Source: Haliotis rubra
Taxonomy: Eukaryota
NCBI RefSeq assembly: GCF_003918875.1
Contig: NW_025767503.1
Location: forward strand, 248,001-312,000
DNA: 64,000 nucleotides
Direction of reading: 5' to 3'
Below the pieces are notes generated by a model. The model was given only the letters and a program-made list of their open reading frames with translations. It was not told the DNA's origin and searched no databases. Position 1 is the stretch's first letter, and every line of letters begins with the position of its first letter. Both the position numbers and the translations under genes were made by a program. This document shows positions 13,311-44,900 of the stretch, piece by piece.

Positions 13311-14758
13311 TGGCTTTTTGGGATTTCTCAATGGCTTTGCACACAAATGCTCCCACACTTTGTGTTCACTGTTTTTGTGGACTTCAGCAGGTGAGTTGAG
13401 CCATCATTCAGCAATTTCAACCAGTGGTCTATCACGTGATTATCATTAATGATACACATTGCATAACTGAAGTATCTGTCAGCTTGAACCTGTTCTGACA
13501 TATTATCACAACAGGTATGCACCTGTCCACCCTCGGAGTTAAACAAACATACATACCAGAGTTCATACGATAATCGCTTAATGGTTTTAGTGACTTGTAA
13601 GCTGAAACATAAAGTCATCCAATCAAATCGATAGAGAGGTCATGGGTTATCAAATCAACTCGTTCGAATCTCAGATCAAGTCGTTACCACACAGGTCAAC
13701 GCGACGCGACACTCGTGTGACGTGCGAGGTTACTATGCAACTACCCTTACGTTGCCCAGGTGGATAACACATGGCAGTATAAGAAGGCAGGTGTGGTTGT
13801 CGGGGAACAACGTGTTGTCACTGTGACGTCTCTAACACAAAGCAGGGGTTATCAATAAACATCGATTTCATTACATGGCTTTATGTATATCTAATAAATC
13901 AGCCAATGGTTTGTTTTTGTTTGCAACCTGATGTTCTAAGATTTCCTGTTGAAGTTACCACGTCTCAGTTGAGTAGGACAACGGGGCTGTCATGCCCCCC
14001 AGTGTTTCCGCTGTTGGCTGTACTGCTTCTATACCGTGTGAGTATAACGTCCCGGTACATCATGATGGACTTTATAAAATTTAATCCTACCTTACATTAT
14101 TTTAGTTGGTGAAATTTTCCTTGGAGCTGTTCTAATTACTCGTAGCTTGTCGACAATTGATTTATTCTGTAACCAAACAGGCTTTCATGAAAAATCGATG
14201 TTTGCCTTCCAAGCTGGCTATTTACATAGACATAGCCTTGTTAAGTTATAGATAATGGCTTTGTGATTCTGGGATAAAGTCACTCTGGAGTCACGTTGAC
14301 ATGATCCTCCTACACAGGGCAGTATCGGAGTTTGACAGCATTTTCTACAACTTAACCGAAAAAGCTGAACTTTCACATGCTTGTTTACACCACTGTTGAC
14401 AACTCAATATGTGTACGAGATCCGATTTCGATTTTCAATATGGTCGCCACAAATGATCAACCAGTGCGCTCAAAATGTAATGTCATTTGGTGTGTACGTA
14501 GACAATAGTTGGGTTCGTTCTGCCTTGTAGCGATATTTTGACCTTGATTTAACCTATGCACTTCACTCAAAATTGTTTCAGGCTATGTAAAAGCCATTTA
14601 ACAAAACATATTCCTCTCAATGAATGACACCTGAATTTGTTCACGAGGTTTGAACCGAGGTTTCAATATGGCCGCCATTTTGAAAAATCTGTTTCTGTCC
14701 AATAATCTCCCATGTCATAGCACAAGTGGGACGCAAGTCTTATGTAGCAATGTTACCT

Positions 14759-16143
14759 ACACTCTTCAAAAATAAAAATGAAACGCATAGGTGTTTTTGA
14801 GAACAGTGAACTCGTGTAGCTGCGCCAAAACAATACAAATATAATATTTCTTTCCAAAACATCATCTTTGTGTGATTGTAAAGAGCTTCAGCGCCAAAAC
14901 GCGGCAACTTTAACTTTTTCCCTTGATTGACAGTATTTGAAGAAATATTCGCCAAAACGTCACCAAGAAAACATGCAAAGCAAAATGCACGTTCCTATAA
15001 AAAGGCAAAGGTTGGGTTTGATTTTGTCATTCGTTTTTTTGCCTGGAAATGAGGAAATCATCATTGTGCCGCCAATCGGAACACCGCCACAGGCAGCACT
15101 GAAGCTGGGGAGTCGCAGTCTGCAGTTGCCTGACATTTCAACGTTCATCAGAGCACCATATCTCGCCTTTGGGATGGTTTCCTGCAGACTAATTCCGCCC
15201 AAGATCGCCAGAGAAGCGGCAGTCCAAGTGTTACCACACAAGTCAAGGACCGCTACATCCGGGTTGCTCACTTGAGTCATCGTCTTGCCACAGCGCACAA
15301 CGCATGCCTGGTTTGAGAAATATTTCCGACAAAACTGTCAGGAATCAATTGCGTGAAGTGGGGATTCGACCAAGAAGACCAGTTGTCGCCCATGTTTTGA
15401 GAGAATTCCATCGGTGCAGTCGTTTGCGGTGGTGTCGTTGAGTCCGGAACTGGAACTTTAGAAACTAGAGGCGAATCTGGTTCAGTGATGAATCACGATT
15501 TCTTCTTCACCGGCGAGATGGAAGCCAGCATGTTTTTCCGAGAAATGAAAGTTTTGCCCATAAGTTCATTCTACAGATTCGGTGGAGGCGGTGTTATGGT
15601 GTAGGGTGAGATATCCAGCACACAGAGATCTGATTTAGTGGTGGTTCAGGGGAATTTGACACCAAATCGGTACATCAACGAAGTCCCTGCACGTCACATG
15701 CTTCCGATTATGGACCGACAGAGGGAGTTGTTCCAGCATGACAACGCAACTTCACATACAGAACGCGTCAATGTCTTGCCATCATATCTTCCCGATCACC
15801 AGATGTAAACCCGATAGAACACCAACGTCAAAACACGCCGCAGACACTTCCACAACTGGCCATCGCATTGCAGGAATAGTGGCGAAGAATTCCGCAAGAG
15901 CGACTTCTCCGACGTATCCAGTCTGTGCCGAGACGGTGCCGAGCAGTAATTGCTGCCAGTGGTGGCCTGACTTTGACGCCATCTTATGGACTCAAGTGAA
16001 CAGAAACACAACAATAAAGGCTGTTGTGTTGGCGAACTCTTTGTCTATAGACGTGTGAATTTTCACCTTTGAAATTACATGAAATAACTGCTCTTAAACT
16101 AAGGCAATAAAATGGGCTTGTGCGTTTCTTTTTTTTAAGAATA
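14759..16143 (+). mobile_element. Decayed Tc1-family transposon (transposase pseudogene)
   Basis: Broken reading frames give EAGESQSAVA*HFNVHQSTISRLWD, RIWFSDESRF (about 15472), FQHDNA (about 15731) and RSPDVNPIEH (about 15793). Imperfect ends ...GAAACGCA / TGCGTTTC... next to TA. Confidence 0.85.
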
Positions 16144-16352
16144 TAATTCTTGCAGATAGTTTTGTTCTGATCCTAAAGCTCCCTTCCACATTCGTCAGAG
16201 ATTTATTTACGAGAAATATAGCTAATCCACATTAGGGTTCAACCTCGTCCATTTTGCCTTGTCATGACTCACCCCTATGATACTTTCTACAGTTCCATAC
16301 AAGATATACATGTACCTTTACATGATGTGGGAATGATGTGGTTCTGTTTCAG

Positions 16353-17534
16353 AGCCATCTGATGTGTAATCAATGCAACAAGGTGAAACGGACATTCGGA
16401 AGACTTGGAAGTGTTGATGCGAATGTGTTCGTTGTTCACGCCAATAGAGATGTAATTAAGAAGGGGAAGCACCAGGATAAGAAGACACTCCTGGATGAGA
16501 TTACAACCCCAGCCTCAGCTCTCAGAAACACAAGTGGTGGATTGCTGGTAGTACATTTAAAAGGTCAGTTTCCCGAAGACAGAAGCTTGGAATATTTTGA
16601 TGAGTTCATCAGCGGTTCTTTGAATAATCTTATTTCCAACGGAACCCTCTATGTGCATGTGTATAAACGTGCTTGGCTAAATCTGAAGACTGGATTTCAA
16701 GAATTTTCAGATTTTGTAGCAATAAGAATTGAGCAGGACAATTCAAACGTAGCCACAGTTACCTTTAATACCAAAATACGATCTGACTTTGAAACGAGGG
16801 ACCCTTCGATCTTGAATCTTGTTTCCCTTTTAACTAATAAGCCAAGAAATTCGCAGAGTGTACCACAGATTAGAGGATTACCAGTACACACTTCCAAACA
16901 ATTTGAATGTCGAAATTGTGAGTTCAAAGCCTTTCAGCCAATGCCAGAGAAGGTGAATGAAATTAACGAAGGCAAGCTTGACATTGTGGAGTATCTGTGG
17001 TCAGATCTAAAGCTGAGGGACAACATAACTTCCTTTACCAAGGTACCTGATGGAGGATCCTTGTATGTAGGGATTTCTGAAAAACTGGACACAACCACAA
17101 AGTCAAAGTATCCTGTTATTACCGGATTTCAGCTTGAAAACACTTATGAACCTGAGGCTTGGGGGGTGATCAGTGTTAGTGACCATCAGTTCAAACTGAG
17201 GATAAACAGAAGTCAGCTTGAAAGGAAAATATTTGACAAATTAAGTGAGTTAACTCTCCTGAACCTAAATGGTGAATTCATAAATCCTCCAAATGATATG
17301 ATAAAAGTCACCTTTCACAAGGTTGAAGGACGTTCAGCAGACCTGCATGTTCTTGAAGTATCTGTCTGCTACTTAGATGGGGTACTGTTTTTCGATAATG
17401 GTCCAAGGTCCCATGTTGTGGACACCAGACAGAGACCCAACAAATGCAAGCGGATGACCAATGACGAATGGTTGGACAGATTGTTTCGGCGCTGTGTAGG
17501 TTGTGGACAACAGTGGGGTTATTTCAACAAGTAG
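16353..17534 (+). CDS. Schlafen-like protein, Schlafen core (AlbA_2-related RNase) domain; about 390-aa uninterrupted frame (acceptor before 16353, first ATG 16362)
   Basis: Schlafen core motifs in order: ASALRNTSGGLLVVH (cf. CALLNSGGGVI), FECRNCEFKAF (E-x4-EFK), ITSFTKVPDGGSLYVGISE (cf. SAFANTxGGYLFIGV), GPRSHVVD...KRMTNDEWLDRL (cf. PxSWxV...LTxxEWxxxM). Confidence 0.75.
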   Translation, partial: SHLMCNQCNKVKRTFGRLGSVDANVFVVHANRDVIKKGKHQDKKTLLDEITTPASALRNTSGGLLVVHLKGQFPEDRSLEYFDEFISGSLNNLISNGTLYVHVYKRAWLNLKTGFQEFSDFVAIRIEQDNSNVATVTFNTKIRSDFETRDPSILNLVSLLTNKPRNSQSVPQIRGLPVHTSKQFECRNCEFKAFQPMPEKVNEINEGKLDIVEYLWSDLKLRDNITSFTKVPDGGSLYVGISEKLDTTTKSKYPVITGFQLENTYEPEAWGVISVSDHQFKLRINRSQLERKIFDKLSELTLLNLNGEFINPPNDMIKVTFHKVEGRSADLHVLEVSVCYLDGVLFFDNGPRSHVVDTRQRPNKCKRMTNDEWLDRLFRRCVGCGQQWGYFNK

Positions 17535-17888: not shown

Positions 17889-20038
17889 ATGTCGTCGTCT
17901 GAAGATGAGGAGTCGAGTGCTTGCATCCCAGAGGAGGATATCGTCTGCTCACTGACAAGGAGCGATGACTCGGATACAGATACGGAATCTGAAACGATGG
18001 ACCACCTTGCAGGTACATACACATGAGTGCCAACATGCATAAGGCGTTGTTATTTACAGGACATATTGTGAGTTAGGCTGTAGACTNNNNNNNNNNNNNN
18101 NNNNNNNNNNNNNNNNNNNNNNNNNNNNNNNNNNNNNNNNNNNNNNNNNNNNNNNNNNNNNNNNNNNNNNNNNNNNNNNNNNNNNNNNNNNNNNNNNNNN
18201 NNNNNNNNNNNNNNNNNNNNNNNNNNNNNNNNNNNNNNNNNNNNNNNNNNNNNNNNNNNNNATGGATACTGTTATTCCAGGTGATACCTGCCATGTTGCA
18301 ACGGAATAGGTTGTGTATTGGGGAGAGGAGACTGGTATATGTTTTCTAAGTATGCCTCATTGTGATGCTTTCAGAAATGGACATGCTGCTTCCATCGTTC
18401 GATCTTCAAGATGACGAATATCACAATATCCTTTCTGCCGGTATGATTCCATCAGCCGGTAAGTGTTTGAACTGGAAAATGGAAAGTATACGTGTAATAA
18501 GAAACTCGATATTATATGAGTTGTAAACTATTTGTGTTTATGTTTAGAATCCTTCATAGTCCCAGGAGCCATGTCCCAGTATTTACAGCACCACCAGCCG
18601 GCCATATACAGCAAGGCAATACAGGTACATGGAGGTCAAGGATCCATAGTGTACATCCCTGCCGCCATCATTAACCGCCATCAGTTCCAGATTTCTCACC
18701 CCAGGCCTAACAGTGTCTTGTGTGATGCGTTTGTGTTTCATCCTTCCTGGCCAATCATGCTGCTCACCTTCTCAACACAAACCAAGTCCCGAGTGTCCCG
18801 ATACAACGCTAGTGTGGCCAGAGCTGGCATTCTGCTGCTGAGCTCACACCTTCAAGACACCTTCACTTTTGTCCATGGAGTGATTGACACCGCTACATGG
18901 CAATCTGATACTCTGTTTGCTGAAAAGATTAGGGAATTCGAAACCTCTGCAGAGAACTTTTCTGTTCCTATTTCCCTACAAATGACTGAAGTCAAATGCA
19001 GAAGTGCAATCAAGGTTTTGCTTAGAACAGACTCAGGCCAAGTGAACAGGACAAGAGGAGCAGAAGAAAATCTCTCATCAGTCTGGCGTCCAATGAGTCC
19101 GGACGAGAACTGCGACAAACACAATGGTAATACTTTACTCAATGTTACAACTCTAATAGTTTTTAATTCCAATATCTAACAATGTGTCGAAGGCATCATA
19201 CGTATGTCATGATCGTCATTATGTTTGCGTTTGGTGCAATGTCTAATACAGTGCGTTCAGAGGAGTTTTACAATGTGTAGATAGAGTCTAATGCAAATTA
19301 GAACGTTTTTCGGGTTAAATGAATTTTTTTCACCGGGGTATACATTAATAGTACAGCCCCAAAACAGCCAGTTACATACCTGCAGCTAACTAATCAGGAA
19401 ATTATGAAAAACTACAGGTATATCATACTAAAGTACGGTTTATGAACATTTTTGTGGGAGTCTTCCCTACAAAGAAACAAAACCCTTCCCAAACAGTCAT
19501 GATCCCTGCCTTTTTGTTTCATATTCGTGTCAATGAGTTCGTTATTGATAGTCATATGAACTGGTGACCTTGGCCAATCTCTGCGATTGTACGATTCTGA
19601 CACATCATGAGCATGTGTTGAATCACTATCTGTGTGTGTGTCTGACACATCATGGGCATGTGTTGAATCACTATCTGTGTGTGTGACACATCATGAGCAT
19701 GTGTTGAATCACTATCTGTGTGTGTGACACATATTTCTATCCACCACGTGACTAACAGGGGAGTTGGAAACATAAGCAGCTGATCATCCGGAAACACAGA
19801 AACATGTCACCCAAACACAACATTACGCAACTACATTACCTTTGACATATGTAATATTTCCTTTTCTTTTGAGGTTTAATATACACTGGTTTCAGCATAC
19901 AGAATTGTATGGAATGTAAAATAACTTTCATGCTTTCATTTTTCAGATGTACTAGGACTTGGATACTTAGTATTTTTCGGAAAGGCTGTCAAACGATACA
20001 TATTTGAAGAACTATTTCCATACCCGGAAGAATTGTGA
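17889..20038 (+). CDS. Predicted spliced CDS with Schlafen linker-domain-like region; exons 17889-18012, 18375-18458, 18548-19126, 19947-20038 (about 292 aa; assembly gap in first intron)
   Basis: All three introns are GT-AG, phase 1 and frame-preserving. Exon 3 has QGSIVYIP, VLCDAFVFHPSWPIMLLTF, SRYNASVAR and VPISLQMT...AIKVLL, resembling the SLFN linker (GILIFS, VICDALLI...PILYT, YxxxTA, YPxSY...LVIVLL). Acidic N-terminal exon. Confidence 0.55.
18087..18260. other. Assembly gap (174 N)
   Basis: Run of n characters. Confidence 1.
19597..19731. repeat. Three copies of a unit of about 45 bp
   Basis: Unit TGACACATCATGAGCATGTGTTGAATCACTATCTGTGTGTG. Confidence 0.9.
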
Positions 20039-21334: not shown

Positions 21335-23367
21335 TACTCTCCCAGGAAAGAAACGCATATATGAATTTCAACTGTATTTCTATGTTTATTTTGAAACATC
21401 TTGTAGGCTTTATTAGTCAATGAAATATAGCGAAATTGCACACTGGGAATGCAGACTTATCCGTCTTTGGCACCAACTCGAGGAAAGTCAGTTTGAGTGT
21501 CACATGGAGACGTGTGGTGGCACTGAAGTCAATACCTCGTGTGACCACCGTGGGCATCCAGAACTGCACGGCATCTCGTGTTGCCCAATCGCTGCCCACT
21601 CTGCCTGTAGTGCCTGTGCGAGTTGCTGAAGTGTCTGGGGCTGAGGGTTACGGCGTCGCACCCGTCTCTCCAGGGCATCCCACCGATGTTCGATCGGGTC
21701 TAAGTCCGGTGATCTTGAGGGCCAGGGGAGCACATTGATGTTGTGGTTCTGGAGGAAGTCTCTAGTGTGACGTGCTGTGTGGGGCCTGGCATTGTCTTGT
21801 TGAAACAACTCCCTCTGGCGATCAATGATTGGAAGGAGGTGTGGGCGTAGGATTTCGTCACAGTACCGTTGAGCTGTCAGGTTGCCCTGGATCATCACCA
21901 AATCACTTCTCCTACGGCAGGTGATCTCTCCCCACATCATAACACTTCCCCGGCCGAATCTGTCCACCTGGGGAACGCAAGCGTCGGCGAAACGTTCACG
22001 TCGACGTCTGTACACCCACATTCTTCCATCGCGTCGTTCCAATAGAAATCGTCATTCATCACTGAACCAGATTCTACGCCAATTCGGTAGGTTCCAGGCC
22101 TGAACGTTGGTGCACCATTGAACTCGATGTCGACGATGTTGTTGTCGAAGCATAGGGCCAAAATAAGGTCTTCTGGCACGTAAACCAGCCTCTCTCAACC
22201 TGTTCCTGACGGTCTGTGCAGAAATCCTCCTCAATCCGGGTATTTATCGAGCGGACTGGTCGCCGTAGCTGTTCGATGACGCAGGTGATGTACCCGGATG
22301 AAGCGATCCTGCGCCGCAGTGGTCGCTCGATGTCGCCCACTACGAGGGGCATCTGCTACCGCATTCTGCCGGAGATATCTCTCCCAGAGCCGTGAAATGG
22401 TGCTTTGGTGAACATTCATGCGTCGGGCAACTGCACGTTGAGACTGGCCAGCTTCAAGCAAACCAATGGCGCGGGGGCGCGGTGGGCGAACTGGCTAAAG
22501 CGCCAGGCTAGTGATCCAGCGAGCTTGAGGTGACGGGATCGAGCCCACCTGTGACCGGGTGTAAAAACCTTGGGAGTCAACTTTGTGTGCAGACTCTTTC
22601 AGTGTTGTCACAACCCCTAGTGTACAGTACACAACCCTGTGCACTTAAAAGAACCCACGAATCCGTAGGTATATGACCAGATGGTGGCCACATGAATACG
22701 TGCAAACACCCAGTTGCGGGTACAGCAACGTGCAGTGAACTTGGACAAAGTACTGTGACTATGTGTCCCAGTGCACCCAGCTGTGAATGGGTACCTCGTA
22801 AGGATGGGAATGCCACAATAACTCGGTGCGCCTAGTGGCTGCAAGAGTTTGTATGCTCCCCAGGGAGTTGAGATTGACAATACGATGTGCCGTTGAGATT
22901 GACATCCAGTGAACGAGGGAAAAAACAAAGCGCCTTTGAGCAGCTGAGCGGAGCTGGATATCGGCGCTATACAAATGTATATATGATGATATGATGATGA
23001 TGAATGGCGATATGACGGTTGGCTTCACTTAGACGTGGCATTTTGCGTTCGTCAACAATATTCCAAATACAGTGAATAATCGACAGACAGCGATCAACCT
23101 TTTATACCTATCATTGAGACTATCTGATCCCCAACTTTCACGTGTATTGCATGTGAATTGTGTATTCTGTGACACTACACGCCGAAATTGAAAATCATGC
23201 TGTAAAATACGGGTATTTTACGGATGGTGCGTTTTGTTGTGATGTTTCAAAACATAAACACCATAGGACTCATAAACAGAGCAAACCTTTTGTAAAATGA
23301 ATCACGTTTTAATTCATTGCTACATTAAATTGCTATTTTCATGATGCTTTTCTTTTTTTGGAGGGTA
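21335..23367 (-). mobile_element. Tc1-family (DD34E) transposon, defective, interrupted by a SINE
   Basis: Transposase from ATG 23041 (MPRLSEANRHIAIGLLEAGQSQRAVARRMNVHQSTISRLW after removing the SINE), then WFSDE, FQQDNARPH and WPSRSPDLDPIEHRW with 34 residues between D and E. In-frame stop after SDE and frameshifts. Imperfect TIRs TACTCTCCCAGGAAAGAAACGCAT / ATGCTTTTCTTTTTTTGGAGGGTA flanked by TA. Confidence 0.92.
22472..23002 (+). mobile_element. SINE family C (about 530 bp) nested in the Tc1 transposase
   Basis: tRNA-like head GGGGCGCGGTGGGCGAACTGGCTAAAGCG...GGGATCGAGCCC, central CAGCTGTGAATGGGTACC, 3' GCGCTATACAAAT plus (ATG)n tail. 7-bp TSD AATGGCG (22465-22471, 23003-23009). Confidence 0.9.
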
Positions 23368-26675: not shown

Positions 26676-27260
26676 TCCTATAATATACGCGCGTACATAT
26701 ACACGCATTCACACACACACGCACGTACATATACATGCATACACGCTCTCACACACGCACATATACATGCACTCTCACACACACTCACACACACTCACAT
26801 ATACACGCACTCACAAACACGCACACACACACGCACATATGCATGCACTCACACACACGCACGCACATATACATGCACACACGCATATATACACGCACTC
26901 ACAAACACGCACATATGCATTCACCCACACACGCATATATACATGCACACACGCACTCTCACACGCACCCACATACACACACGCACACACATATGCATGC
27001 ACTCGCACACAAACGTACATAACTGACACGGGGTTGTAGAGCGGCCCCCACTCGCTTATACTGAACTCAAAATTCACATAGTATGTCAATTTTAATGCAA
27101 CTTAGGTGTTGTGTTCAATGTGGAGGTTTTCAGTGTGCGTGCGTGCGTGTGTGTGTGTGAATTGTGTTTTGTTTTTGTTCTTTCGTTTGTTTGTTTTTGT
27201 TTGTGTTTATGTCCAGTTCAGATTTTCTTTCTTTTTAAGAAACAACAGACGGCAAAGAAG

Positions 27261-30200
27261 ATGGACATTGCCATCATTGGCGTGGGATGTCGATTTCCCG
27301 GGGCTTCCTGTCTCAGGGAATTCTGGAAAGTCTTGGTGAAGGGAGAAAACCACGTAACAGACATTCCGCCAGACAGATGGAACAAGGACAGTTTCTATGA
27401 CCCGGATGTAACAGCCATGGGCAAGTTCTACTCTAAAAAAAGCGGGATTCATAAAGAAGTAAGTCTATAGCTTGTCTGTATGATCCTTCTACGAACCAAG
27501 ATGATAGTAACTTTAAACGCGGAGCGAGTTCGTGGTTGTTGAGATATTCTCCTTGTTTTATTCGTAATCAAAATACAAATACAGAATCCAAATTTGTTAG
27601 CTTCTTTGATTAGCATTGAGTGTTTAAATTTTGTTATTCCAGTTATGCAGACTTTGACAACAAACTGTTCGGTATCAGCGAGAGCGAGGCTGCCCAGATT
27701 GACCCCCAGCAGCGCCAGGTGTTGGAGTGCACGTACATGGCGCTGGAGGACGCCGGCGTCACCAGACAACATATAGCAGGACAGAACGTCGGAGTCTACA
27801 TAGGTAAGTCATGTAGCCATCACTCTGCAGGTAGATTACTAACATCGCATATTGCAACCCAGCTAACAAAACACCAGACGGGTATTTATACTTTAAAAGA
27901 TAAGGAGCGCCACACTTTCAGGTTACATTCTGTTCTGGTAAAACATACTCCCAATATTTGTTGTTTAGTTAGACGAGATCATGAGGAATTGGAGGGAAAT
28001 CCACACATGTTTTAATGGGCAGTGGGGTAGTCTTGAAGACACCATAACAAACAGTTCGATATATATAGGGGTAAAGACCCGTGCAGATCCGGGTTACAAC
28101 TGATCTTCAGTAACACATGCTTGATGCTTGTCGTAAAAGGCGACTAACGGGATCGGGTTGTCAGGCTCACTGACTCACAACACACAGTTTAATATCCATA
28201 GGGGTAAAATGTGTGAAGCCCGTTCTATTCCCAGTTGTTGTGAGGTGCGGTCTTTTTCTAAAATGTGGAAATGTTTGAAGCCCATTTCTGGTGTCCCCCG
28301 CCGTGATGTTGCTGGAATATTACTAAAAGCGGCTTAAAACCAAACTCAGTCAGTCAGTCTAAAATGTGGAGTAAATCTAATCTCGCTCACTCTGAGAGGA
28401 CACGAGTGATGACTGGTGTCTGTCTATAAGATACTCATTTACCTACCACCAGGTGCCATGAACAGCGACTTCACCGTGAGGATGACTGCCAACTCTCACG
28501 AGATCGACCACTACTCTGTTGCTGGTCTCGCAGGAAGTGTGTTAGCCAATCGTGTGTCCTACGTGTACAACCTGTCCGGACCCTCCATGGTAGTGGACAC
28601 AGCCTGTTCCTCGTCTCTGGTGGCCATACACCAGGCAAGCCTGGCCCTCCGAGCAGGTGCGTGTACATCCCGTCTCAGTAATACTTCTGTTATATTTACA
28701 ACTGGCTACCCCATATATCTTACATTCTCTTTTAAATATACCCATATGTTGGAATGCAAATGCAACGTATCAGTACATCTAGATGTCTACCTTTTCTCTG
28801 CCATGTAAAAGGTAGCTAAACAATATCTAGACATTTCATTTGTGTCTCACGCATCACAATCCTCATGTGTTGTCCAGGGGACTGTGAGATGGCGCTCTGT
28901 GGGGGCGTGAACCTGCTGCTGCACCCCACAGTGTTTGTCCCCCTCAGCAAGGCCCGGATGCTGTCCCCCAGTGGCCAGTGCCACGCCTTCTCCTCTAACG
29001 CAGACGGGTACACGAGGGGAGAGGGGTGTGGGATCGTCCTCCTCAAACCACTAGCACAGGTGAGCAAGTTTGGTATCGCGCTGCTTTCAGTTTATCAGGG
29101 CGTGTCTGCCTGATGTTGGATCATTTCTACCGGGATGAGACACGAGCACTAACACAGGAACATAATTTGCAAATGAAATCATACGTTTCTGCCACGCCTA
29201 AGGGACGCAACTCTGTATGGCGAATTGCGGCGTGTTTGAAGACTTGAGTATTCATGCCTCCAAGCTGAGGTACCCTACTCCAGTTTGTCTGGGTATTATC
29301 AACAGTAAGAACCAGAGTCTATATTGTGAAACCGAGTCACATAGTGAGATCAAACACTGTTTCATATTATGTATGTGTTATTTGGAATCAGATTAAGTGA
29401 GTAGTGTGTGTCCATGTTGAAGGCACTTCATGATGGTGACAACATTTGGGCGACGATATCTACTGGTGTAAACCAAGATGGTCGAGCGGCCCAGCCCATC
29501 ACAGCGCCATCTGGTAGCCAGCAGCTTCAGCTGCTCCAAGACCTCTACAGGGCGCATGATGTTGACCCTTACGCCGTCGAATACATTGAGGCCCACGGTA
29601 AGTCTTTGTGTGTTTGTGTTACACTATATTCTCATGGCGTTCGTTTATCTGTCAATGATCAGTGTACAGATACAGATTAGATACATAGTATGTATTCCTG
29701 AAAATATAACAGTTGATTTAATGTTTAAGGCCACTAAATTGCAATAATTTCGGAGGTTCAAATAGTCAGCTCCGAATCAATCTGATCTGATTATGTTTCA
29801 CAGGTACTGGCACCAAACTAGGCGACCCTATCGAGGTCAACGCGTTTGGAGAATTCTTTACCTCTGATGGGAATCCAAGAACACGTTACCTGGGTTCTGT
29901 AAAGACCAACATCGGCCACCTGGAACCAGCAGCAGGGGTGGCTGGTCTTATCAAGGTCCTGCTAATGATGAAACACAACACAGTCGTACCATCTCTTCAC
30001 TTCGACAAGCCAAACGAACATATAGACTTTGAAAAGTTTCGGTTTATCATTCCACAAGAACCTTCACAATGGACATCAGTTGCGAAAGTAGCTTGCCTCA
30101 ATTCATTTGGTTTTGGCGGAACTAATAGTCATGCAGTTTTACATAGTTACAATAAACCACCACGTGCCAGCAGGCCCATCTTGGGGGCTTCACATATTGT

Positions 30201-33200
30201 ATGTTTTTCAGGCAGCACCTCAGAGTCACTGAAGAAAAGTCTTGAGAACTTTCTTTCTTGTGATGATCTCACAGACGATGACCTGCCAGCATTGTCCTAC
30301 ACATCGACAGTCAGAAGGGAACATTTCCCGCATAGAAAGGCATTTGTTGTGAAGACTATTAGTGACTTGAAACAGCAAGCACAAATAATACTGAAGAGCA
30401 GAGACGTCCTTGACATTAACGCAAGCAAGTTGAAGATCATCTTCGTCTTTTGTGGGATGGGCACTGCTTGGCCAGGTATGTGTGATGGCTTCATGAAAAA
30501 CAACAAAACTTTCAGCAAAACAATCAACATGATTAATGCGTCTTTGCAAAGATTCGTCTCCTGGTCATTGACAGAGAGGCTCAGAAACGGTTATGACGTA
30601 CAAGAACCTCATTTCGGCCCAATCGCCATATTTGCTTGTCAGGTCGCTCTTGCCAAACAGTGGGAGTCCTGGGGAGTAAGCCCAGCCGCTGTTGTCGGTC
30701 AGTCAGTAGGGGAGGTGGCTGCAGCACACGTTGCTGGTATCCTGTCACTGGATGAAGCTGTGAGGGTCATCTTTCACAGGACACGAATCCTGGCTGAAGC
30801 CACAGGAGGTAAGATGGTTCTTGTCAGAAACCTTAAGACAGAGAAGGTACAAGACATTTGTGAAGAAGTTGCAAGCGTGAATATTGCAATTCGTTACAGC
30901 CCTGTGTCGTGTACAGTTAGTGGTGACTCTGCTGCCGTGGATGAGGTGAAGTCACGTCTTCAGTTGTCTCACAGTGATCTTATGATGACTGATCTCCCTG
31001 TCAGTGCCGCATACCACAGCCACCACATGGACCGATGCAAGCTGCAGTTAGACAACATACTTGCAGACCTGAAACCCTTACCAGCGAGAATACCTATGAT
31101 GTCAACAGCTGCTTCTCACTCCACAGAGGAAGATGTCACATCATCTGAATACTGGGGTACGAATGTTCGAAATCCTGTTCAGTTTGCTTCAGGAATACAA
31201 AATTCTACCTCTGACAATCATCTCAATGCATTTATAGAAATTGGTCCAAAGCCAGTATTGAAAGCTCACATGGGTGACATTTTTCAGGAAAGTACATCAT
31301 CGTGCATATGCCTTCCTTCCTTGACAGTCAAGTTTAGAGAAAAGACGATCCTGGGGACCCTCTCCGAGCTGTACCAGATGGCCATGAACATAAACTGGCA
31401 GGAGCTGTTTAACCACACAGAACCCCCAACACCAGTCCCGAGTTATGCCTTCTTTCACAAGCACCTAATGATCTTGCCTCCTATTACAGAGGAAGAAGTG
31501 TTTGGATCTAATGGAAACTCTGGAAGTCATCTCTTTGTAAAACTGTCACCTTCCACAGCCAAGTGCATACTGAACATCAGACCATCTACCTTTGGAACTG
31601 TCTATGAACACAAGGTCAAGGACATTATTGTCGTCCCAGGAGCAACCTATGTGGAAGCGGGGTTTGGAATCGCAAGATCAATGAATATTGCTGATGTTAG
31701 ACATCTAGTGGTATCTGTCAGCTTTCTGAATCCAGTAACTCTGAAAAAAGACATGTCTGTTCAATTGGATGCTGATATTGAGGATCAAAGCCAAACTACA
31801 AATGACTGCACCAAAGAATTCACCATCCAAAGTACAGGTGATGTCATTGCAAAGGGGAGAATATGGGCGTGTCACGGTGAACTTCAAGAGGAACGGATGG
31901 ACATAGAGGCCATAGAGGAGAGATGTACCCAAACAATCACCGGCGAAGAAGTGTATCAAATTCTGCAATATTCTGGATTTACATATGGAACTAACTTTGC
32001 AACCATACAATATGCATCAAGGGGGAAATCTGAGAGTCTCACAAGCTTAGCAGTCGGACAAAAGCTGAGAGAGGAGATGACCAACACTGTTATTCATCCT
32101 GCAATACTCGATGGAATGCTGCAGTCGGCAGCTGCATTCGACATGCAAGAAAGGGAATTTCTCCCAGTCGAGCTCAAGAATGTAATCGTCAGACATTCAA
32201 TGGAAACAGAAATGTTTGTTTATACAAGAATGACAGACAGCAACGGTTCCCACACATCCTTTACCTTAACACTTCTTTCACCCAATGGAACAATCATAGC
32301 AAATGTTGAAAGATTCACAACAAAATTTATAGGGTCAGATACTTTTGATATTCACAAAGCGACATTCAAAACAAGCTTGGTTTTGTTGGATTCTTTTGAC
32401 GTCTCACAGAACAGTGTTGATACTGGAACTGTCATCTTCACCAACGTAGATCTAACCAGTTTAGAACTAGCTTGTGTCATACATGAATTGGATCACATGG
32501 GTGTTGAAGGCACAAGACACGCTCTTGACTCTGTCATACACAACATCAAGCAAATCTGTTTCGTCTTTGCGGTAACTGACCTCCAAACTGACAGAGGAAA
32601 ACCCTGCAAAAGAACTCACAAGTAGGATTATGTCCTTGAGACTCATTGCCCTTTACCTAGCCAGTAGAGGAGTGTCTATTCCTCTGGTGATAATTTCAGA
32701 AATACAAAACAGTGGAGAAAATGTTGCAAGTGGCTGTCTCAGTGAAGCTGTCAAAGGTTTCATCAGGTGTGTCTTAAGGGAGTACAGATCTCTTCACATT
32801 CAGCTTGTGGATGTTCTAGTTGACAATGACAGGAACTTCTTAGAAAGGCTTCCAGGGATATTATCACAATGCAGATCTGAAGATTTCAAAAGGTACCCTG
32901 AGATAGGTCTCCACAATGATAAAGTCTACATGCACACAATTCTGTCACACCCAAGCCTGCAACCACTGTTTCGATCAGTTACAATGGATGAACGCTCTGA
33001 GGGTATGCTCTGCACAAGATCAAAGACATCAATAGTCAGTCCGTTTTTCTACCCCAAACAAAAGACAGCTACATCCATGAAAGATATGAGTGATATAGTG
33101 GTGACTTCTGTGGTTGTGCATAGCCCCATGCTGCATGGACTTCGCAGTGGGTGCCCTGCAGGATCCACGGCCAATATACACCCAATTCTGTGTCTTGAAA

Positions 33201-36200
33201 CAAATGGTAAATTGTCAGTCGGATCCAGACGTAGCCATCCTGATGTAATAACCCTCTTTCCTTCAAATGTTTGCAAGACTATCCAGGTTCCAAAGTGCTG
33301 CACCATAGACGTAGAACAGGTGCCTGGTTATGTTCCGGGTCATCTTACTATACTGTATCTGATGTGGAGTTTGTCCATTAATACAGCAAGGAACAATGTA
33401 GTCATTTTGTACACAAACAGCACTAAGCCATTTGCAAATGCAATGTCACATTTGTTTCTTTCACAAGGGACAAAGAATGTGTCATTAGTCAAGCCAAACG
33501 ATACTGTACAGCAAAGAAGTGACTCTGTAACTTTGATTTCGACAGTTTTATTGACAGAAGTGGAAGCCAAAAGACTCTTGACATCGTTCACAAATGTACA
33601 GAAAATAATTTGCTTTGAACCTATCACTAGACGATCTGTCCTGGAGTACCTACTTGGAGCTTTGCAAAACCTGCAACTTCATGTCATACGATCATTTGAA
33701 ATATTTTCTCCAAGGGTAATGACTGCAACAGTACCCAAAATGATTAAATGGATAAAATCCCACAGTAAGACGGTGCTCAAAATATGTCACAGCTTCAGTG
33801 ACATCGTGGTATCAAAGCAACAAGAAACAACCACCCCACTTAACATTTCAGAAGTTCTTAATAGCACCGTGTTGTCCTTGTCTTCAGATAGCAACTTGGA
33901 CATGAATTCTATGATGACACCAAGTTCCCACCTGTTCCAGCAGACAGGTTCCTATCTGGTTGTGGGAGGTCTCACAGGACTGGGATGGGAATGTGTGACA
34001 TTCCTTGCAGCAAGAGGAGCTGGATGTGTGGTCATTCTGAGTAGACGTAAGCCTAATCCTGAACGACAAGCAGATATGGACCATCTATCTCAGCAACATA
34101 ACTGCTACGTAACATCCATTCAAGCTGACGTCACAGTCTACAAGGATCTGGAATCAGCTATATCAAAGGTAAAGACACATTTGAAACCTCTCAAGGGTGT
34201 ATTCTACGGTGCAGCTGTTTTACAGGATGCTTCCCTCTCTGAGATGACAAAGGAAAAACTCGTCACAGCTATGTCTCCAAAGGTAACAGGTGCTTGGAAT
34301 CTTCATATCCTGACTGCAGATCTTCCTCTTGATTTCTTTGTCCTGCATTCTTCTGGTGCAGCTGTTCTGGGGAATGCTGGTCAGTCAAACTATGGAGCTG
34401 GTAATGGATTCTTGGACGGATTGGCAGTGTACAGGAGGCAGCGTGGAAAGAGTGGCCAGAGCATCAATTGGGGACCTCTCGACCTTGGGATGCTAGAGAA
34501 CAAGGGATCTGTTCTGAGGAAGTTGGAGAGTCAAGGATACATGGTCATTGGTAGGAAGGACATAAGTCAGTGCCTGTCACACATGCTAATGCTGAACGAG
34601 CCCCAAGCCTTGATGTGTAGAATAGACAGACAGAAAATGGCAGAACAATTACAGAGGGATAAGGAAACAACCCTAATGGTACGACTTAAGACATATTTGG
34701 AACCTGCCATGAAGATCATAAATCAAAAGGCAACATCGGAAGGGGGCAAATGTTCTTTCAGTGTTGACAGACTACAGACTTGCACAGAGGAGGAGGGGCT
34801 GCAGATGTTGCGGGAATATGTAAAACAGCTTGTGTGTGATAAGGCTTTGTTGGATATAAAGAGTTTTCAGCTGGACGCCAACATGAAGGATCAAGGGGTG
34901 GACTCAATGTATGCCATGGAAATTACAGGCGGAATCTTGTCAGACATTGGAGTAAAGCTGTCCACTCACGAAATCCAGCTACAATCAACATGCAGCATTG
35001 CCAGAAGAATACTGGACTTACTGTCAGGTAAAGGGGAGGAACAGACGCAAGCCTATGACATGGAGTCCGTCATAACTAAACAAGCAATAAGCATGTCAAT
35101 TGCAAGGTCAGTTTGTGGACTGAAGACAAACTGTGATCACAACATGGGTTTTGTAATCGTCAGTACCATTTCTGTACCAGATGTGGTAAATATATCAACA
35201 TTGATAGCTGTGGCAAAAGAGTGTGTGTCGCGCCATCAGGTCACAAGAACCTCTTACATTCTTAGCCATGACAAAGTCTCCACAAACATGTTGCCTCTGG
35301 AGGATGCCTTGGACTTCCGTGTACTGTCCGGAGAAGACCTGTCCGAGGTCAGGAAACACACAGAGGAGCCAATGCATCTTCAGCACAAGAGCCCTTTACG
35401 ATTCATATTTCTTACAAGGTCCCTACAGCTCAGAATGATTTTCCACAGACTTGCATTTGATTTGAAAGCCATCACAATCTTTGTGAAGGAACTTGAAAGC
35501 ATGGCCAATGCAGCACAGCTGGGTAAACCCCTGGAAGATGTTGTAACTGATCTAGATGAGGATATTGCGAAGGAAATCCAGAAAGTTCTTGCTCCGGACT
35601 TCAAGAGAGTAAACCAGTTTTGGAAGACAAAGACAAAGTACATACCTTACAACAGTCTATCGAAAGGGTCAGTTATACACAACGTACAAACTGGTCACAT
35701 CTTCCTCACAAGACCAGTAAACAATCACCTGTACACAAAAATCATGAAATACGTAAAGGACAGAGGCCTCACTCCTTTTGATTATCTTGCTAGTATCTAC
35801 CAGCTGTTTCTTGCCTTTGTCAGCAGCAAAACAACATCAACCATCACGACCTCTGTTGACCTTCGTGGCCTGGTTCCTGCTCTGACTAGAACGCTGGGGA
35901 GATGCACGAACTTCATTCCCCTGATCTGCCAAATACCAGAGGACACCACTACAGTGGAAGAGTTCCTGAAGCTTAACAAGAAGACTATACAACACTTCAC
36001 CCAGTATGCAATATATCCGTCAGAAGAAATCAAAAAGCTGGTTCCCGAGGACCAAAACCTTGGTACAAACTACTTCATATATGAAACTGATATCATCACC
36101 AATACATCTAACCAGTTGACAATAGACATGCCAGTCATCTTTGATTCCTCCACTGAAACATTCATGTACATTTGGCAGAGGAAGGAGACGAGGCTCATGG

Positions 36201-36400
36201 AGATGAGATTTCATCTCAGGAAGGATCTGTTCACTGTCTCCAGGGCAGAGGTCCTTGTCAAGGCATTCCTAGGTCTAGTGGAAGATTCTTTGAACTTCCC
36301 TGGATCAACTGTAGGGCATCTAAGACAACAAAAGTACATGACCTTGGACGAAAGGAGTTCCAAGAAACATGTCCTATCAGCATTGTGCTCTCTGATGTAG
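27261..36400 (+). CDS. Animal type I polyketide synthase, KS-AT-DH-psiKR-degenerate ER-KR-ACP-C, about 2,504 aa; exons 27261-27458, 27643-27803, 28453-28656, 28878-29059, 29423-29597, 29804-36400; two +1 frameshifts in this assembly
   Basis: KS: [25 protein letters not shown] (Cys codon 28605), [39 protein letters not shown]: GQSVG (Ser codon 30703), AYHS. DH: [23 protein letters not shown]: [22 protein letters not shown]: GVDSM (Ser codon 34904). C-like: [17 protein letters not shown]. Five GT-AG introns; corrected length 7,515 nt is divisible by 3. Confidence 0.93.
28270..28358 (+). mobile_element. SINE family A 3' part in PKS intron 2 (a family B 5' fragment lies at about 28075-28175)
   Basis: GAAGCCCATTTCTGGTGTCCCCCGCCGTGATGTTGCTGGAATATT...AAACTCAGTCAGTCAGTC. 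Confidence 0.8.
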
Positions 36401-41900: not shown

Positions 41901-44900
41901 AGCTTTGTTTGTAAGGAGCTATCCTTTAAACAGAAACAGGAGTTACCAGTTTATTAACAGCTGTAAGACTTAGATATATGAGAAAAGAATATCTTTCCTG
42001 CACCAGAGACATTACAACATTACTCCAGCATGAGGTAAATGCTGGAAAGCTTTCTTGATGCAGTGGCAGATAACAGAAACACAGCAACAAACCTCCATGT
42101 GATGGACCAGGTTTGGGGGCTTCATCTTCTGATGAACTGCTGGAGTTTTCTTCCGCTCTGTCTGTGGGGATCCGAAGTCTGGCACCAGGCTTGGATTGCT
42201 CGTGAACCAGCAGGGCGTTCATCACCTCGTCATTGGCGTTCACCTGAGACAAGTCCTGAGATGGTCCAGCCTCGTAAGCACTCTCCATCTAAAGAATGGA
42301 AAAAGTTGACATTACCATGTTGAGATTGTACTGCTTTCAGTAATATTGCAGGAAAAAGATGACAGCCTGTCAGTAATCTGGTCAGGGCAGCCATTGATGT
42401 TAGTCCATGTGATCTGGGTATTCTGACATTTAGTCACATCTTATGATCAACATTAGTTACTAGGGACCTTTCATTACTTACTGCACTGTATGGTGAAACC
42501 ACAACCACAGGTACAGTGAAACCACAGCCATGGGTACAGTGAAACCACTACTACAGGTACAGTGAAACCACAACCATGGGTACAGTGAAACCACTACTAT
42601 AGGTACAGTGAAACCACAACCATGGGAATGGTATAACCACAACCACAGGTACAGTGAAACCACTACTATAGGTACAGTGAAACCACAACCATGGGAATGG
42701 TATAAGCACAACCACGGGTACAGTGAAACCACAACCATGGGAATGGTATAAGCACAACCACGGGTACAGTGAAACCACTACTATAGGTACAGTGAAACCA
42801 CAACCACAGGTACAGTGAAACCACAACCATGGGTACAGTGAAACCACAACCACAGGTACAGTGAAACCACAACCACAGGTACAGTGAAACCACTACTATA
42901 GGTACAGTGAAACCACAACCACAGGTACAGTGAAACCACAACCACAGGTACAGTGAAACCACTACCATGGATGCAATATGAAGGAACAATATCAAGGCAA
43001 CGTTCAGTACTGCCGATAGGCACACCTGATGAAACCAGGTTGAGTCACACTGAGGCAGTCTCACACTCTAGCCACTGGAATGAAGCCTGTGTCCAGCAAA
43101 ATACAGATCAGTCTGGCAAGCTCATCAATACAAGACCATATATTACCACTAAATCATAAAAAGGATATATGCAGGGAGACACAGAGGTTTTGGGTGCACA
43201 CTGCTAAGGTACTAAATGGCAGGAAAACAATCAAACAAGCAAAATGTTTACATTTCAGGAAAGTGAGTGAGTTGAGTTTTATGCCGCACTCAGCAATAGT
43301 TCAGCTATAAGGCGGGGATCAGTAAAGAATCGAGTCTGGACCAGACAATTCAGTGATCAACAGCATGAGCATTGGTCTGCGCAATTGGGAACCGATGAAA
43401 TATGTCAACCAAGTCAGCGAGCCTGACCACCCGATCCCGACAGTTGCCTCTGACGACAAGCATTGGTTACTGAAGGCACATTCTAACCCGGACCTTTACG
43501 GGTACATTTCAGGAAAGGGACTCTAAACAATTGACTGCAAAATGTTTGGTGAATAAATAACAATTGCTTGTTTATTACCCTTCACAGCACAAGCTTCCCA
43601 GAACCAGTAATTCATTACTTGTTTATTACCCTTCACAGCAATACAAACTTCCCAGAACCAGTAATTCATTTCATGAGAAAAGGTAAGGAATGCAAATTCA
43701 ACATGTTGAACGACTACATCAAGGGTTCAGTGATAAATATCTAGTGATGATGTTACCTGTGAGTCGATGACTGTGGCGCCCTCTACAGTGCTCTTGGACA
43801 TCCATTCAGGCACCTCTTTCTTCTGTACTGTCGCATTCTTTTCATCCTCGTCCATGCTGATGGTGATGCTGTTGTCTGTGTAGCCAAAGCGGTTGTTCCG
43901 AGACAGTTCCCCACTCCAGACCATTTTTTCCGCATCTACGTTGGTCCTGTTCTTGTCACTTGGTGCCCTGCGGATCATGCACAGAAATAACATGAGCCTT
44001 ACAGTACCTCACAGAACTATGTTAGACACTTTCCTCAACAACTTGAAATCGTTCTAAACTAAGCTCAATACAACATGATGACCAATAATAACACTCCCAA
44101 ACTACTCACTAATAGTCTCCATGTCCCACACCATGCTCACTGTTTACCACTACTGCTACTGATCTTCCAGGTTGCTAATGCAGAGCACGATTCGTATTGG
44201 CTTCAAACATTTGGTTAATCTTTAGATACATGAAAAAGATTGTTACATAACAAATACTTGTTGTTTTTTTCTCAACATGCTCAATTCATTAATATTAACA
44301 TAAAGGAAGGAATATTGTGTATCCGTGGCATGTGAAGACATCTGATTTACACTGTATTCCACACTCATTGTTATCCTTCAGCAGCAGGAGTCATAGTTTA
44401 TCATGTTCACACACAAAACCATTGCTGCAAACAAAGTGATGATATATTGACTTCAGTCTTTAATCATTATCAACAGTATGACCAAACATCAACAAGGAAT
44501 GATTGACACACAACATACCTTGGTAATAATTTCTTGATGTCAATAGGTTCCCGGTTCTAAGATTTCAGGAGCAAGTTTGATATCCTCACAATCCCGTAAT
44601 AAGTCATAAATAACCTGAATCTGTTCATTAAATTTGGCCATGGTTGTGCGAGCATCCTTCTTTGGCATGGAGCTCTCATCCTCCTCCACTTCAGTGTGGC
44701 AGTAGGTGCACTGTAAGGAGCCTGTCATTGGGTCTACAAGCTGCCCAACCTCCAGATCCGTGTATGACTTCAAACAGTTTGGACATTTAAATGAGGCACG
44801 ACTTGTGTTATCCCGTTCCTCAAGCTCAATCTTTCTCCTCATGTGATCAAGCTTATATTTCACCACATTCACAAAAACATTATAGTTGATGAAATAATAA

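What the first reader, a model, noticed from the sequence alone, without database searches (positions are those of the whole stretch)
16353..17534. Invertebrate Schlafen with a full two-lobed RNase core and an intact E-x4-EFK motif
Seen: N-lobe, active-site, GGxLxVG and terminal PxSxxV...EW motifs in mammalian SLFN order and similar spacing. The zinc-binding CC pair is not evident and GVDD reads GISE. Established: mammalian SLFN11/13/14 cores are tRNA/rRNA endonucleases in antiviral and DNA-damage responses, and related domains occur in prokaryotic defence. Inference: a little-studied invertebrate innate-immune RNase.
Basis: partly seen in the sequence, partly recalled or inferred. Interest (0 to 1): 0.7.

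Follow-up and report, generated by a model that had tools for sequence, protein, structure and literature searches.

The report
Abalone stand-alone Schlafen-core gene
This stretch is the main exon of an intact blacklip-abalone gene for a short protein with the complete two-lobed fold and acidic active-site residues of the mammalian antiviral Schlafen RNases. It lacks their zinc finger and belongs to a large snail-specific family that standard annotation leaves as "uncharacterized".

Summary
Window 16353-17534 (+) is the second coding exon of Haliotis rubra LOC124260918 isoform X1. It encodes a ~390-residue, core-only Schlafen.

- **Homology:** Pfam does not see this protein directly. A profile of its relatives matches only Schlafens among solved structures (SLFN11 N-domain E 2.9e-25; abalone-only profile 2.4e-13).
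- **Fold:** an AlphaFold model (pLDDT 91) superposes on the SLFN13, SLFN11 and SLFN14 cores at Z about 22 over about 300 residues.
- **Active site:** E182, E187, K189 and E240 occupy the positions of rat SLFN13 E205, E210, the EFK lysine and D248.
- **Zinc finger:** the mammalian CCCH finger is absent. An invariant Gly replaces one Cys of the CC pair. An N-terminal CxxC plus two His is conserved instead.
- **Family:** 145 representatives at 50% identity. All 22 that carried a species name are gastropods.
- **Evolution:** the syntenic copies in two Californian abalones share a premature stop, yet dN/dS against them is about 0.34.

RNase activity, an immune role and transcription were not shown here. 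The most likely function is a metal-dependent tRNA/rRNA endonuclease. This scan has already noted other Schlafen-like genes elsewhere in this genome (s1-344896, s1-322290 and others). I rate it a new variant of a known kind, of moderate interest.

The parts
13906..14037 (+). Exon 1 of NCBI model X1: 44 codons, ATG at 13906, donor CGT|GTGAGT. It is not conserved in paralogues or in the syntenic loci, so it is probably 5' UTR or a prediction artefact.
   Evidence: There is no blastn match in L002 or L003.
14038..16352 (+). Intron 1. It contains a Tc1/mariner transposase remnant and very high-copy repeats at about 14729-16198.
   Evidence: depth table.
16353..17534 (+). Main coding exon: the complete Schlafen core, with TAG stop at 17532-17534.
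16362..16376 (+). Probable true start Met, followed by the conserved N-terminal CxxC (C2, C5). This is a candidate replacement zinc site together with H26 (16437-16439) and H65 (16554-16556).
   Evidence: Paralogues start here. The zinc role is an inference.
16518..16556 (+). N-lobe motif ALRNTSGGLLVVH. N56, G59, G60 and H65 are invariant in the abalone clade.
16563..16565 (+). Internal phase-1 donor (AAAG|GTCAGT) used by NCBI isoform X2. X2 joins the first 67 core residues to the downstream gene.
16905..16928 (+). Active-site motif E182-x4-E187-F-K189, equivalent to rat SLFN13 E205, E210 and the EFK lysine.
17052..17081 (+). GGSLYVGISE. E240 sits at the position of the catalytic Asp, the second D of GVDD (D248 of rat SLFN13).
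17136..17213 (+). Gene-specific insertion of about 26 residues with low model confidence. It is absent from paralogues but present in the syntenic orthologues.
17376..17381 (+). D339-G340, the two columns where mammalian Schlafens carry the zinc-binding CC pair. G340 is invariant in the family.
17400..17471 (+). C-terminal bridging-domain motif GPRS...DEW.
17889..20038 (+). Neighbouring four-exon gene (NCBI isoform X3, 292 aa) that NCBI files under the same locus. It is conserved next to the core in three abalone species. I detected no Schlafen homology. It is not part of the core protein.

Best explanation
The region is the main exon of an intact, selectively maintained Haliotis rubra gene. 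It encodes a stand-alone Schlafen core of about 390 residues: N-lobe, bridging domain and C-lobe, with no SWADL linker and no helicase. This is the architecture of mouse group I Schlafens.

Shown here:
- It is homologous to, and predicted to fold like, the mammalian Schlafen N-terminal RNase domain.
- It keeps a carboxylate at all three catalytic positions (E182, E187, E240) and the motif lysine (K189).
- It has been under purifying selection.
- It belongs to a large, rapidly turning-over gastropod family.

Inferred:
- Like SLFN11, SLFN13 and SLFN14 and the bacterial Schlafens, it clamps a structured RNA in the valley between the lobes, most likely the tRNA acceptor stem or rRNA.
- It cuts that RNA with a divalent metal held by the three carboxylates, lowering translation in infected or stressed cells.
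- The fold is stabilised not by the mammalian CCCH zinc finger, which is absent, but possibly by a clade-specific N-lobe site made of C2, C5, H26 and H65.
For: - **Sequence homology.** The family profile (103 sequences) hits only Schlafens in the PDB. SLFN11 N-domain scores E 2.9e-25 across both lobes. The abalone-only profile still gives 2.4e-13, and all 14 hits are Schlafens.
- **Fold.** The AF2 model has pLDDT 91.3 and pTM 0.89. The top 25 Foldseek hits are all Schlafen cores. VIA-align gives Z 22.6 for SLFN13 (308 residues aligned), 22.0 for SLFN11 and 21.8 for SLFN14. The next tier falls to Z 9.5 for single-lobe AlbA_2 domains that cover only residues 169-345.
- **Independent lead.** The language-model neighbours are mollusc SLFN_AlbA_2, Schlafen 1 and SLFN12-like clusters.
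- **Active site.** Residue mapping to E205, E210 and D248 comes. E182, K189 and E240 are invariant in 29 abalone paralogues and are the residue in 92, 93 and 95 of the 103 aligned sequences.
- **Selection.** dN/dS is 0.33-0.35 at dS about 0.48 against the syntenic copies, with Fisher p 2.7e-12. Among the indels listed, the only one inside the CDS in another individual's DNA is +3 nt, while the flanking indels are 1, 5 or 8 nt.
- **Immune flavour, circumstantial.** Paralogues are fused to AIG1/GIMAP and ApoL domains. The gene shows lineage-specific loss. A mussel study listed transcripts it annotated as Schlafen among the most upregulated after Vibrio infection (PMC7772429). Bacterial Schlafens cleave tRNA in phage defence through Ex4(E/D)xK (PMC13056530).
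Against: - There is no direct Pfam hit, even at E 10.
- No RNA evidence was obtained. Runs X1-X3 are DNA, and X4 is undetermined.
- The third acidic residue is Glu, not Asp.
- The CCCH zinc finger is absent. Yang et al. found it essential for SLFN13 solubility, and a review calls it conserved in all Schlafens.
- About two thirds of the family have Gln at position 187, so catalysis may not be the family's common function.
- Mammalian SLFN5 and mouse Slfn2 show that a Schlafen core need not be a tRNase (my own knowledge).
- The orthologues in H. rufescens and H. cracherodii share a TAA at codon 66, so the gene is dispensable in those species.
- I could not measure the active-site geometry because the model coordinates are not exposed.
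Confidence: 0.55

Rival explanations
1. It is a non-catalytic RNA-binding Schlafen. The core binds tRNA or rRNA, or another nucleic acid, and protects, sequesters or senses it rather than cutting it, as reported for mouse Slfn2 and for SLFN5.
For: - It has the core-only group I architecture. The nearest named Atlas clusters are Schlafen 1 and SLFN12-like.
- 66 of the 91 family members that carry E or Q at position 187 have Gln, with no compensating acidic residue at 239.
- The zinc finger needed for the mammalian fold is missing.
Against: - This particular protein keeps all three carboxylates and the Lys.
- E182, K189 and E240 are nearly invariant even in the Gln-type paralogues, which argues that the site is used.
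Confidence: 0.25
2. It is a gene on its way out. The ORF is still open but is no longer expressed or needed, and H. rubra has simply not yet acquired a stop.
For: - The syntenic copies in H. rufescens and H. cracherodii share a premature TAA at codon 66.
- H. rufescens adds a TGA at codon 5, and H. cracherodii adds E182K and N56D. Neither copy is annotated.
- No RNA evidence was found here.
- Exon 1 is unconserved.
Against: - The 390-codon ORF is intact, with every family-invariant residue present.
- dN/dS is 0.34 over dS about 0.48.
- The only listed indel polymorphism inside the CDS is in frame.
- NCBI models the gene.
Confidence: 0.1
3. It is half of a split group II-like Schlafen. The core and the adjacent 292-aa gene (17889-20038) would then be two pieces of one ancestral Schlafen (core plus linker) that still work together, or are joined by splicing.
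For: - The adjacency, about 300-360 bp apart on the same strand, is conserved in three species.
- NCBI files both under one locus and predicts a chimeric isoform X2.
- There is no AATAAA or ATTAAA between them.
- The only Pfam hit for the downstream protein, and a weak one, is SLFN_GTPase-like at E 0.13.
Against: - E 0.13 is not significant, and the SW of the supposed SWADL motif reads SK in the orthologues.
- The PDB profile search, hhalign against a Schlafen middle region and the Atlas all gave nothing.
- X2 would truncate the core after residue 67.
- The downstream gene stays intact and annotated where the core is a pseudogene.
Confidence: 0.07

Closest known systems
N-terminal RNase core of mammalian SLFN13, SLFN11, SLFN14, SLFN12 and SLFN5 (PDB 5yd0, 7fex, 7zel, 9nyy, 7lrc, 6rr9)
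   Same: - The same two-lobed horseshoe with a bridging domain (Z 16-23 over 280-308 residues).
- Colinear motifs.
- Carboxylates at the positions of E205, E210 and D248, and the EFK lysine.
   Different: - Only 13-18% identity.
- No CCCH zinc finger.
- The third acidic residue is Glu.
- No SWADL linker or helicase.
- A conserved N-terminal CxxC and an invariant His65 that mammals lack.
- Not detected by Pfam PF04326.
Mouse group I Schlafens (Slfn1, Slfn2)
   Same: - Core-only architecture of similar length.
- These are the nearest named clusters in the Atlas search.
   Different: - They keep the zinc finger.
- Slfn2 is described as a tRNA protector rather than a nuclease (my own knowledge).
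- They are restricted to rodents.
Prokaryotic Schlafen / AlbA_2 nucleases (pSlfn, Cash) and the SAMD9 tRNase domain
   Same: - The Ex4(E/D)xK active-site motif and the C-lobe fold (Z 7-9.5 over residues 165-347).
- A tRNA-cleaving defence role in bacteria.
   Different: - In the solved structures matched here (SAMD9, RecG-related, DIP2311), only the single AlbA_2 lobe aligns.
- The abalone protein has the duplicated two-lobe core so far described in vertebrate Schlafens.
Orthopoxvirus v-Slfn (Poxin-Schlafen)
   Same: A short Schlafen core without a helicase. The Atlas feature score is 0.91.
   Different: - It is viral, fused to poxin, and derived from rodent group I genes according to the literature.
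- I did not test the relationship further.

Membership tests
Schlafen core (SLFN N-terminal two-lobed domain) | Significant sequence-profile similarity across both lobes | tested here: met
   Family profile against the PDB: only Schlafens, SLFN11 N-domain E 2.9e-25 over positions 27-338. The abalone-only profile gives 2.4e-13.
Schlafen core (SLFN N-terminal two-lobed domain) | Horseshoe fold: N-lobe, bridging domain and pseudo-symmetric C-lobe | tested here: met
   AF2 model with pLDDT 91. VIA-align Z 22.6, 22.0 and 21.8 to SLFN13, SLFN11 and SLFN14 over model residues 1-378. The top 25 Foldseek hits are all Schlafens. This rests on a predicted structure, not a solved one.
Schlafen core (SLFN N-terminal two-lobed domain) | Pfam PF04326 (SLFN_AlbA_2) hit above the gathering score | tested here: not met
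   No hit for this protein at E up to 10. The closest annotated paralogues P0002 and P0003 are sub-threshold at 17.6-19.3 bits against a cut-off of 25.3. 35 of 103 relatives match at E below 1e-3.
Schlafen core (SLFN N-terminal two-lobed domain) | Catalytic triad E-x4-E ... D (rat SLFN13 E205, E210, D248) | tested here: met
   E182 and E187 are identical to the mammalian residues. The third position is E240, a conservative Glu for Asp that is nearly invariant in the family. The geometry was not measured.
Schlafen core (SLFN N-terminal two-lobed domain) | CCCH zinc finger tying the C-lobe loop to the bridging domain | tested here: not met
   The CC columns are D339 and an invariant G340, and there is no HxC in the aligned loop. 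It is called essential or universal in PMC5862951 and PMC8875196.
Schlafen groups II and III | SWADL linker domain and (group III) a C-terminal SF1 helicase | tested here: not met
   The ORF stops at 17534, right after the core. The downstream gene shows no significant linker homology. tblastn with the long family members finds nothing else in the window.
Schlafen RNases | Metal-dependent endonucleolytic cleavage of tRNA or rRNA | not testable with these tools
   This needs recombinant protein and a cleavage assay.
Innate-immune effector genes | Expression, and induction by infection | tested here: inconclusive
   No RNA run held the locus. X1-X3 are DNA, since their contigs cross both intron boundaries. 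X4 is undetermined.

The most novel reading that the evidence does not exclude
Gastropods carry their own large radiation of complete two-lobed Schlafen cores that do without the CCCH zinc finger and instead use an N-lobe Cys2-His2-type site. If so, the duplicated Schlafen core would predate the protostome-deuterostome split, or would have been transferred between phyla, rather than being a vertebrate invention. The Glu/Gln split at the second catalytic position would then divide the family into active nucleases, such as this gene, and non-catalytic regulators or decoys.
Probability: 0.3. Interest if true: 0.6.

Novelty: new variant of a known kind. Interest (0 to 1): 0.45.

Why it matters
A 2022 review still states that Schlafens occur only in mammals, Xenopus and one cartilaginous fish, and that their zinc finger is universal (PMC8875196). 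Work from 2026 has extended only the single-lobe nuclease domain to prokaryotes.

- **Wider origin.** A selectively maintained, complete two-lobed core in a mollusc, one of well over a hundred divergent gastropod relatives, shows that the vertebrate-type architecture exists far outside vertebrates.
- **Natural experiments.** The family offers a fold without the zinc finger, Glu in place of the catalytic Asp, and Glu/Gln variants. These can be tested directly by biochemistry.
- **Aquaculture.** Abalone suffer from herpesvirus ganglioneuritis, so a translation-shutoff nuclease family is a plausible and untested resistance factor.
- **Annotation.** These genes are labelled "uncharacterized" because PF04326 misses them.

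Tried and rejected
- **Single-sequence searches fail.** Direct Pfam and PDB searches of the protein gave no meaningful hit. Single-sequence methods are blind to this protein.
- **First model unusable.** The first AF2 run, with a 3-sequence alignment, gave pLDDT 36.7 and I discarded it.
- **Word-index searches added little.** They found only 3 proteins, then 2, so they added no taxonomy.
- **No local paralogues.** tblastn of all family members against the window found no second copy and no extra Schlafen-like exons.
- **No proof of expression.** Only DNA runs held the locus, so transcription stays open.
- **Downstream gene as Schlafen linker.** I tested the 292-aa protein with Pfam (E 0.13), a PDB profile search, hhalign and the Atlas. 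None supported the idea.
- **No compensating acid.** I looked for an acidic residue at position 239 in the Gln-187 paralogues and found no association (p 0.57).
- **Transposon or viral cargo.** I considered this because mariner remnants lie nearby. I rejected it because synteny with the downstream gene holds in three species.

Full report
**Gene and coordinates.**
- The window is Haliotis rubra (blacklip abalone). The ORF at 16338-17534 (+) is 99% identical to NCBI "uncharacterized protein LOC124260918 isoform X1", 437 aa.
- That model has two coding exons.
  - Exon 1 is 13906-14037: 44 codons with donor CGT|GTGAGT.
- Exon 2 is 16353-17534: acceptor tttcag|AGC and TAG stop.
- The intron carries a Tc1/mariner remnant and extremely high-copy repeats.
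- Exon 1 has no counterpart in any paralogue or in the syntenic loci of two other abalones.
- All full-length paralogues begin just before a CxxC. The conserved protein therefore most likely starts at the Met at 16362 and is 390 residues long. I number residues from there.

**Observation.**
  - ALRNTSGGLLVVH: residues 53-65.
  - ECRNCEFK: residues 182-189.
  - GGSLYVGISE: residues 231-240.
  - GPRS...DEW: residues 347-370.
  - The zinc-binding CC pair is replaced by D339 and G340.
  - GVDD reads GISE.

**Is it a Schlafen?**
- Single-sequence methods fail.
  - Pfam gives no AlbA_2 hit even at E 10.
  - phmmer against the PDB finds nothing relevant.
  - The two nearest annotated paralogues, about 40% identical, reach only sub-threshold PF04326 scores.
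- A full HMMER scan of 1.84 billion representatives with a 3-sequence profile found 145 representatives at E below 1e-3, 34 of them below 1e-30.
- 35 of 103 length-matched members hit PF04326 individually.
- The 103-sequence profile matches only Schlafens among solved structures.
  - The hits are SLFN11, SLFN12, SLFN14, SLFN5 and rat SLFN13.
  - E-values run from 2.9e-25 to 2.5e-11, and most matches cover both lobes.
- I guarded against circularity from possible vertebrate members by rebuilding the profile from the 29 top-scoring sequences. All of those whose source I looked up are Haliotis. The profile still gives 2.4e-13 to SLFN11, and all 14 hits are Schlafens.
- With the deep alignment, AlphaFold2 gives pLDDT 91.3 and pTM 0.89.
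- The 25 best Foldseek matches are all Schlafen cores.
- VIA-align gives Z 22.6 (rat SLFN13, 308 residues, rmsd 4.3 Å), 22.0 (pig SLFN11) and 21.8 (SLFN14).
  - There is then a clear drop to Z 9.5 or less for single-lobe AlbA_2 domains (SAMD9 tRNase, RecG-related).
  - Those domains cover only residues 165-347.
- The protein therefore has the duplicated N-lobe, bridging domain and C-lobe architecture, not just one AlbA_2 domain.
- A language-model search gave an independent lead to mollusc SLFN_AlbA_2, Schlafen 1 and SLFN12-like clusters.

**Active site and zinc finger.**
- In rat SLFN13 the catalytic residues are E205, E210 and D248, and a CCCH zinc finger is needed for solubility (PMC5862951).
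- The paper's Glu47, Asn54, Glu229 and Asn236 fix the 5yd0 chain offset at 13.
  - E210 is then the Glu of EFK.
  - D248 is the second Asp of GVDD.
- The profile alignments place window E182, E187, K189 and E240 on E205, E210, the EFK Lys and D248.
- Conservation across the family is as follows.
  - E182, K189 and E240 are invariant in the 29 abalone paralogues.
  - The same three residues occur in 92, 93 and 95 of the 103 aligned sequences.
  - Position 187 is dimorphic: Glu 16 and Gln 13 in the close clade, and Glu 25 and Gln 66 in the wider set.
- There is no compensating acidic residue at 239. This gene belongs to the Glu minority.
- G340 is invariant at one of the two CC-pair columns, and the loop that carries HxC in mammals has no such pair. 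The CCCH finger is therefore absent from the whole family.
- Conversely, C2 and C5 are present in almost every member whose N-terminus is modelled.
  - H65 is invariant in the close clade and present in 87 of 94 residues in the wider set.
  - H26 is His in 21 and Asp in 4 of the 25 close-clade members aligned at that column.
- In the model these residues sit on the first helix and two N-lobe strands, at pLDDT about 95.
- A replacement zinc site is an attractive inference. I could not test it, because the coordinates are not exposed.

**Evolution.**
- All 20 of the 27 looked-up representatives that carry a species name, plus P0002 and P0003, are gastropods: Haliotis rubra, H. rufescens, H. cracherodii, H. 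asinina, Littorina saxatilis and Batillaria attramentaria.
- Nearly all are labelled "uncharacterized". One UniRef name says "Schlafen AlbA-2 domain-containing protein".
- No annotated protein elsewhere is more than about 42% identical to this one.
- Unannotated syntenic copies nevertheless lie just upstream of the orthologues of the downstream gene in H. rufescens and H. cracherodii. They are 80.6% identical in nucleotides and 71-72% in amino acids, without frameshifts.
- Both copies carry TAA at codon 66, where H. rubra has TTA.
  - H. rufescens also has TGA at codon 5.
  - H. cracherodii has E182K and N56D.
- Pairwise Nei-Gojobori dN/dS values are as follows.
  - H. rubra against either species: 0.33-0.35 at dS about 0.48, with Fisher p 2.7e-12.
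  - Between the two stop-bearing copies: 0.5.
- The gene is therefore old within Haliotis, was constrained for most of that time, was lost in the Californian lineage and is intact in H. rubra.
- In another individual's DNA, the only listed indel inside the CDS is +3 nt, in a variable loop. The flanking indels are 1, 5 or 8 nt.
- Family members are fused to AIG1/GIMAP and ApoL domains. Together with this birth-and-death pattern, that fits a conflict or immune gene family, but the evidence is circumstantial.

**Expression.**
- X1-X3 are genomic DNA, because their contigs cross both intron boundaries. X4 has one 804-nt contig over 16951-17754 and is of unknown type.
- Transcription is therefore not shown here. 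NCBI's Gnomon models are the only hint.

**Locus architecture.**
- NCBI files three isoforms under LOC124260918.
  - X1 is the core.
  - X3 is 292 aa, starts at the ATG at 17889 and ends at 20038.
  - X2 is a chimera that leaves the core exon at an internal donor after residue 67 (AAAG|GTCAGT) and joins X3's second exon.
- X3 has 63-66% identical orthologues in two other abalones. It stays intact there although the core is broken.
  - I found only a non-significant PF21026 hit at E 0.13.
  - Its "SW" is not conserved.
  - The PDB profile search, hhalign and the Atlas gave nothing.
- I treat X3 as a separate, tightly linked orphan gene. No AATAAA or ATTAAA lies between the two, so co-transcription remains possible.

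**Comparison with the literature.**
- A 2022 review says Schlafen-like sequences were found outside mammals only in Xenopus and Callorhinchus, and that the zinc finger is conserved in all members (PMC8875196).
- Papers from 2026 show that prokaryotic single-domain Schlafens cleave tRNA in phage defence, with an Ex4(E/D)xK motif (PMC13056530).
- One mussel transcriptome paper lists "Schlafen proteins" among genes upregulated by Vibrio (PMC7772429).
- My searches of the held library returned no paper that describes gastropod two-lobed Schlafens or a Schlafen core without the zinc finger.
- Other windows of this same genome were already flagged by this scan for Schlafen-like genes, so this gene is one instance of a family-wide phenomenon.

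**Verdict.**
- The protein is a genuine, divergent Schlafen-core homologue: group I-like, without the zinc finger, and with Glu in place of the catalytic Asp.
- An active tRNA/rRNA endonuclease in defence is the best-supported mechanism, at about 0.55. A non-catalytic RNA binder is the main rival.
- It is a new variant of a known kind, of moderate interest.

Noticed in passing
window 17889-20038 (+): A four-exon orphan gene (NCBI isoform X3, 292 aa) with an acidic Ser/Asp/Glu-rich N-terminus and no detectable family. It has been conserved about 300-360 bp downstream of the Schlafen core in three Haliotis species. NCBI also predicts a chimeric isoform X2 that joins the first 67 core residues to it.
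   Followed up: partly
L002:8520-9686 (H. rufescens) and L003:8549-9709 (H. cracherodii): Unannotated syntenic orthologues of the core. They have no frameshifts but share a TAA at codon 66. H. rufescens also has a TGA at codon 5, and H. cracherodii has E182K and N56D. This is a lineage-specific pseudogenisation.
   Followed up: yes
window 27111-36400 (+): A large, nearly intronless type I polyketide synthase (KS, AT, DH, KR, ACP) ending in an NRPS-type condensation domain. This scan had already noted it (s1-347347).
   Followed up: partly
protein P0033 (H. rufescens, 798 aa) and one member of alignment A3: Family members in which the Schlafen core is fused to an Apolipoprotein L-like domain (P0033) or to an AIG1/GIMAP GTPase. 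Both domain families are associated with immunity.
   Followed up: no
window 14729-16198 and 21500-22461 (-): Tc1/mariner transposase remnants (DDE_3 plus an HTH). The first lies inside intron 1 of the Schlafen gene, and contigs from thousands of genomic copies pile up on it.
   Followed up: partly
window 52025-57894, 59336-61277 and 63570-64000: Long tandem satellite arrays with 53-bp (about 110 copies), 26-bp and 32-bp units. They explain the strong positive GC skew in the last 12 kb of the window.
   Followed up: partly
window 44540-45166 (-): An exon encoding TFIIE alpha with its zinc ribbon (Pfam E 4e-26).
   Followed up: no
alignment A3, residue 187 of the window protein: A Glu/Gln dimorphism at the second catalytic position across the gastropod family (Gln in 66 sequences, Glu in 25). 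E182, K189 and E240 stay nearly invariant in both types. I have no explanation.
   Followed up: partly
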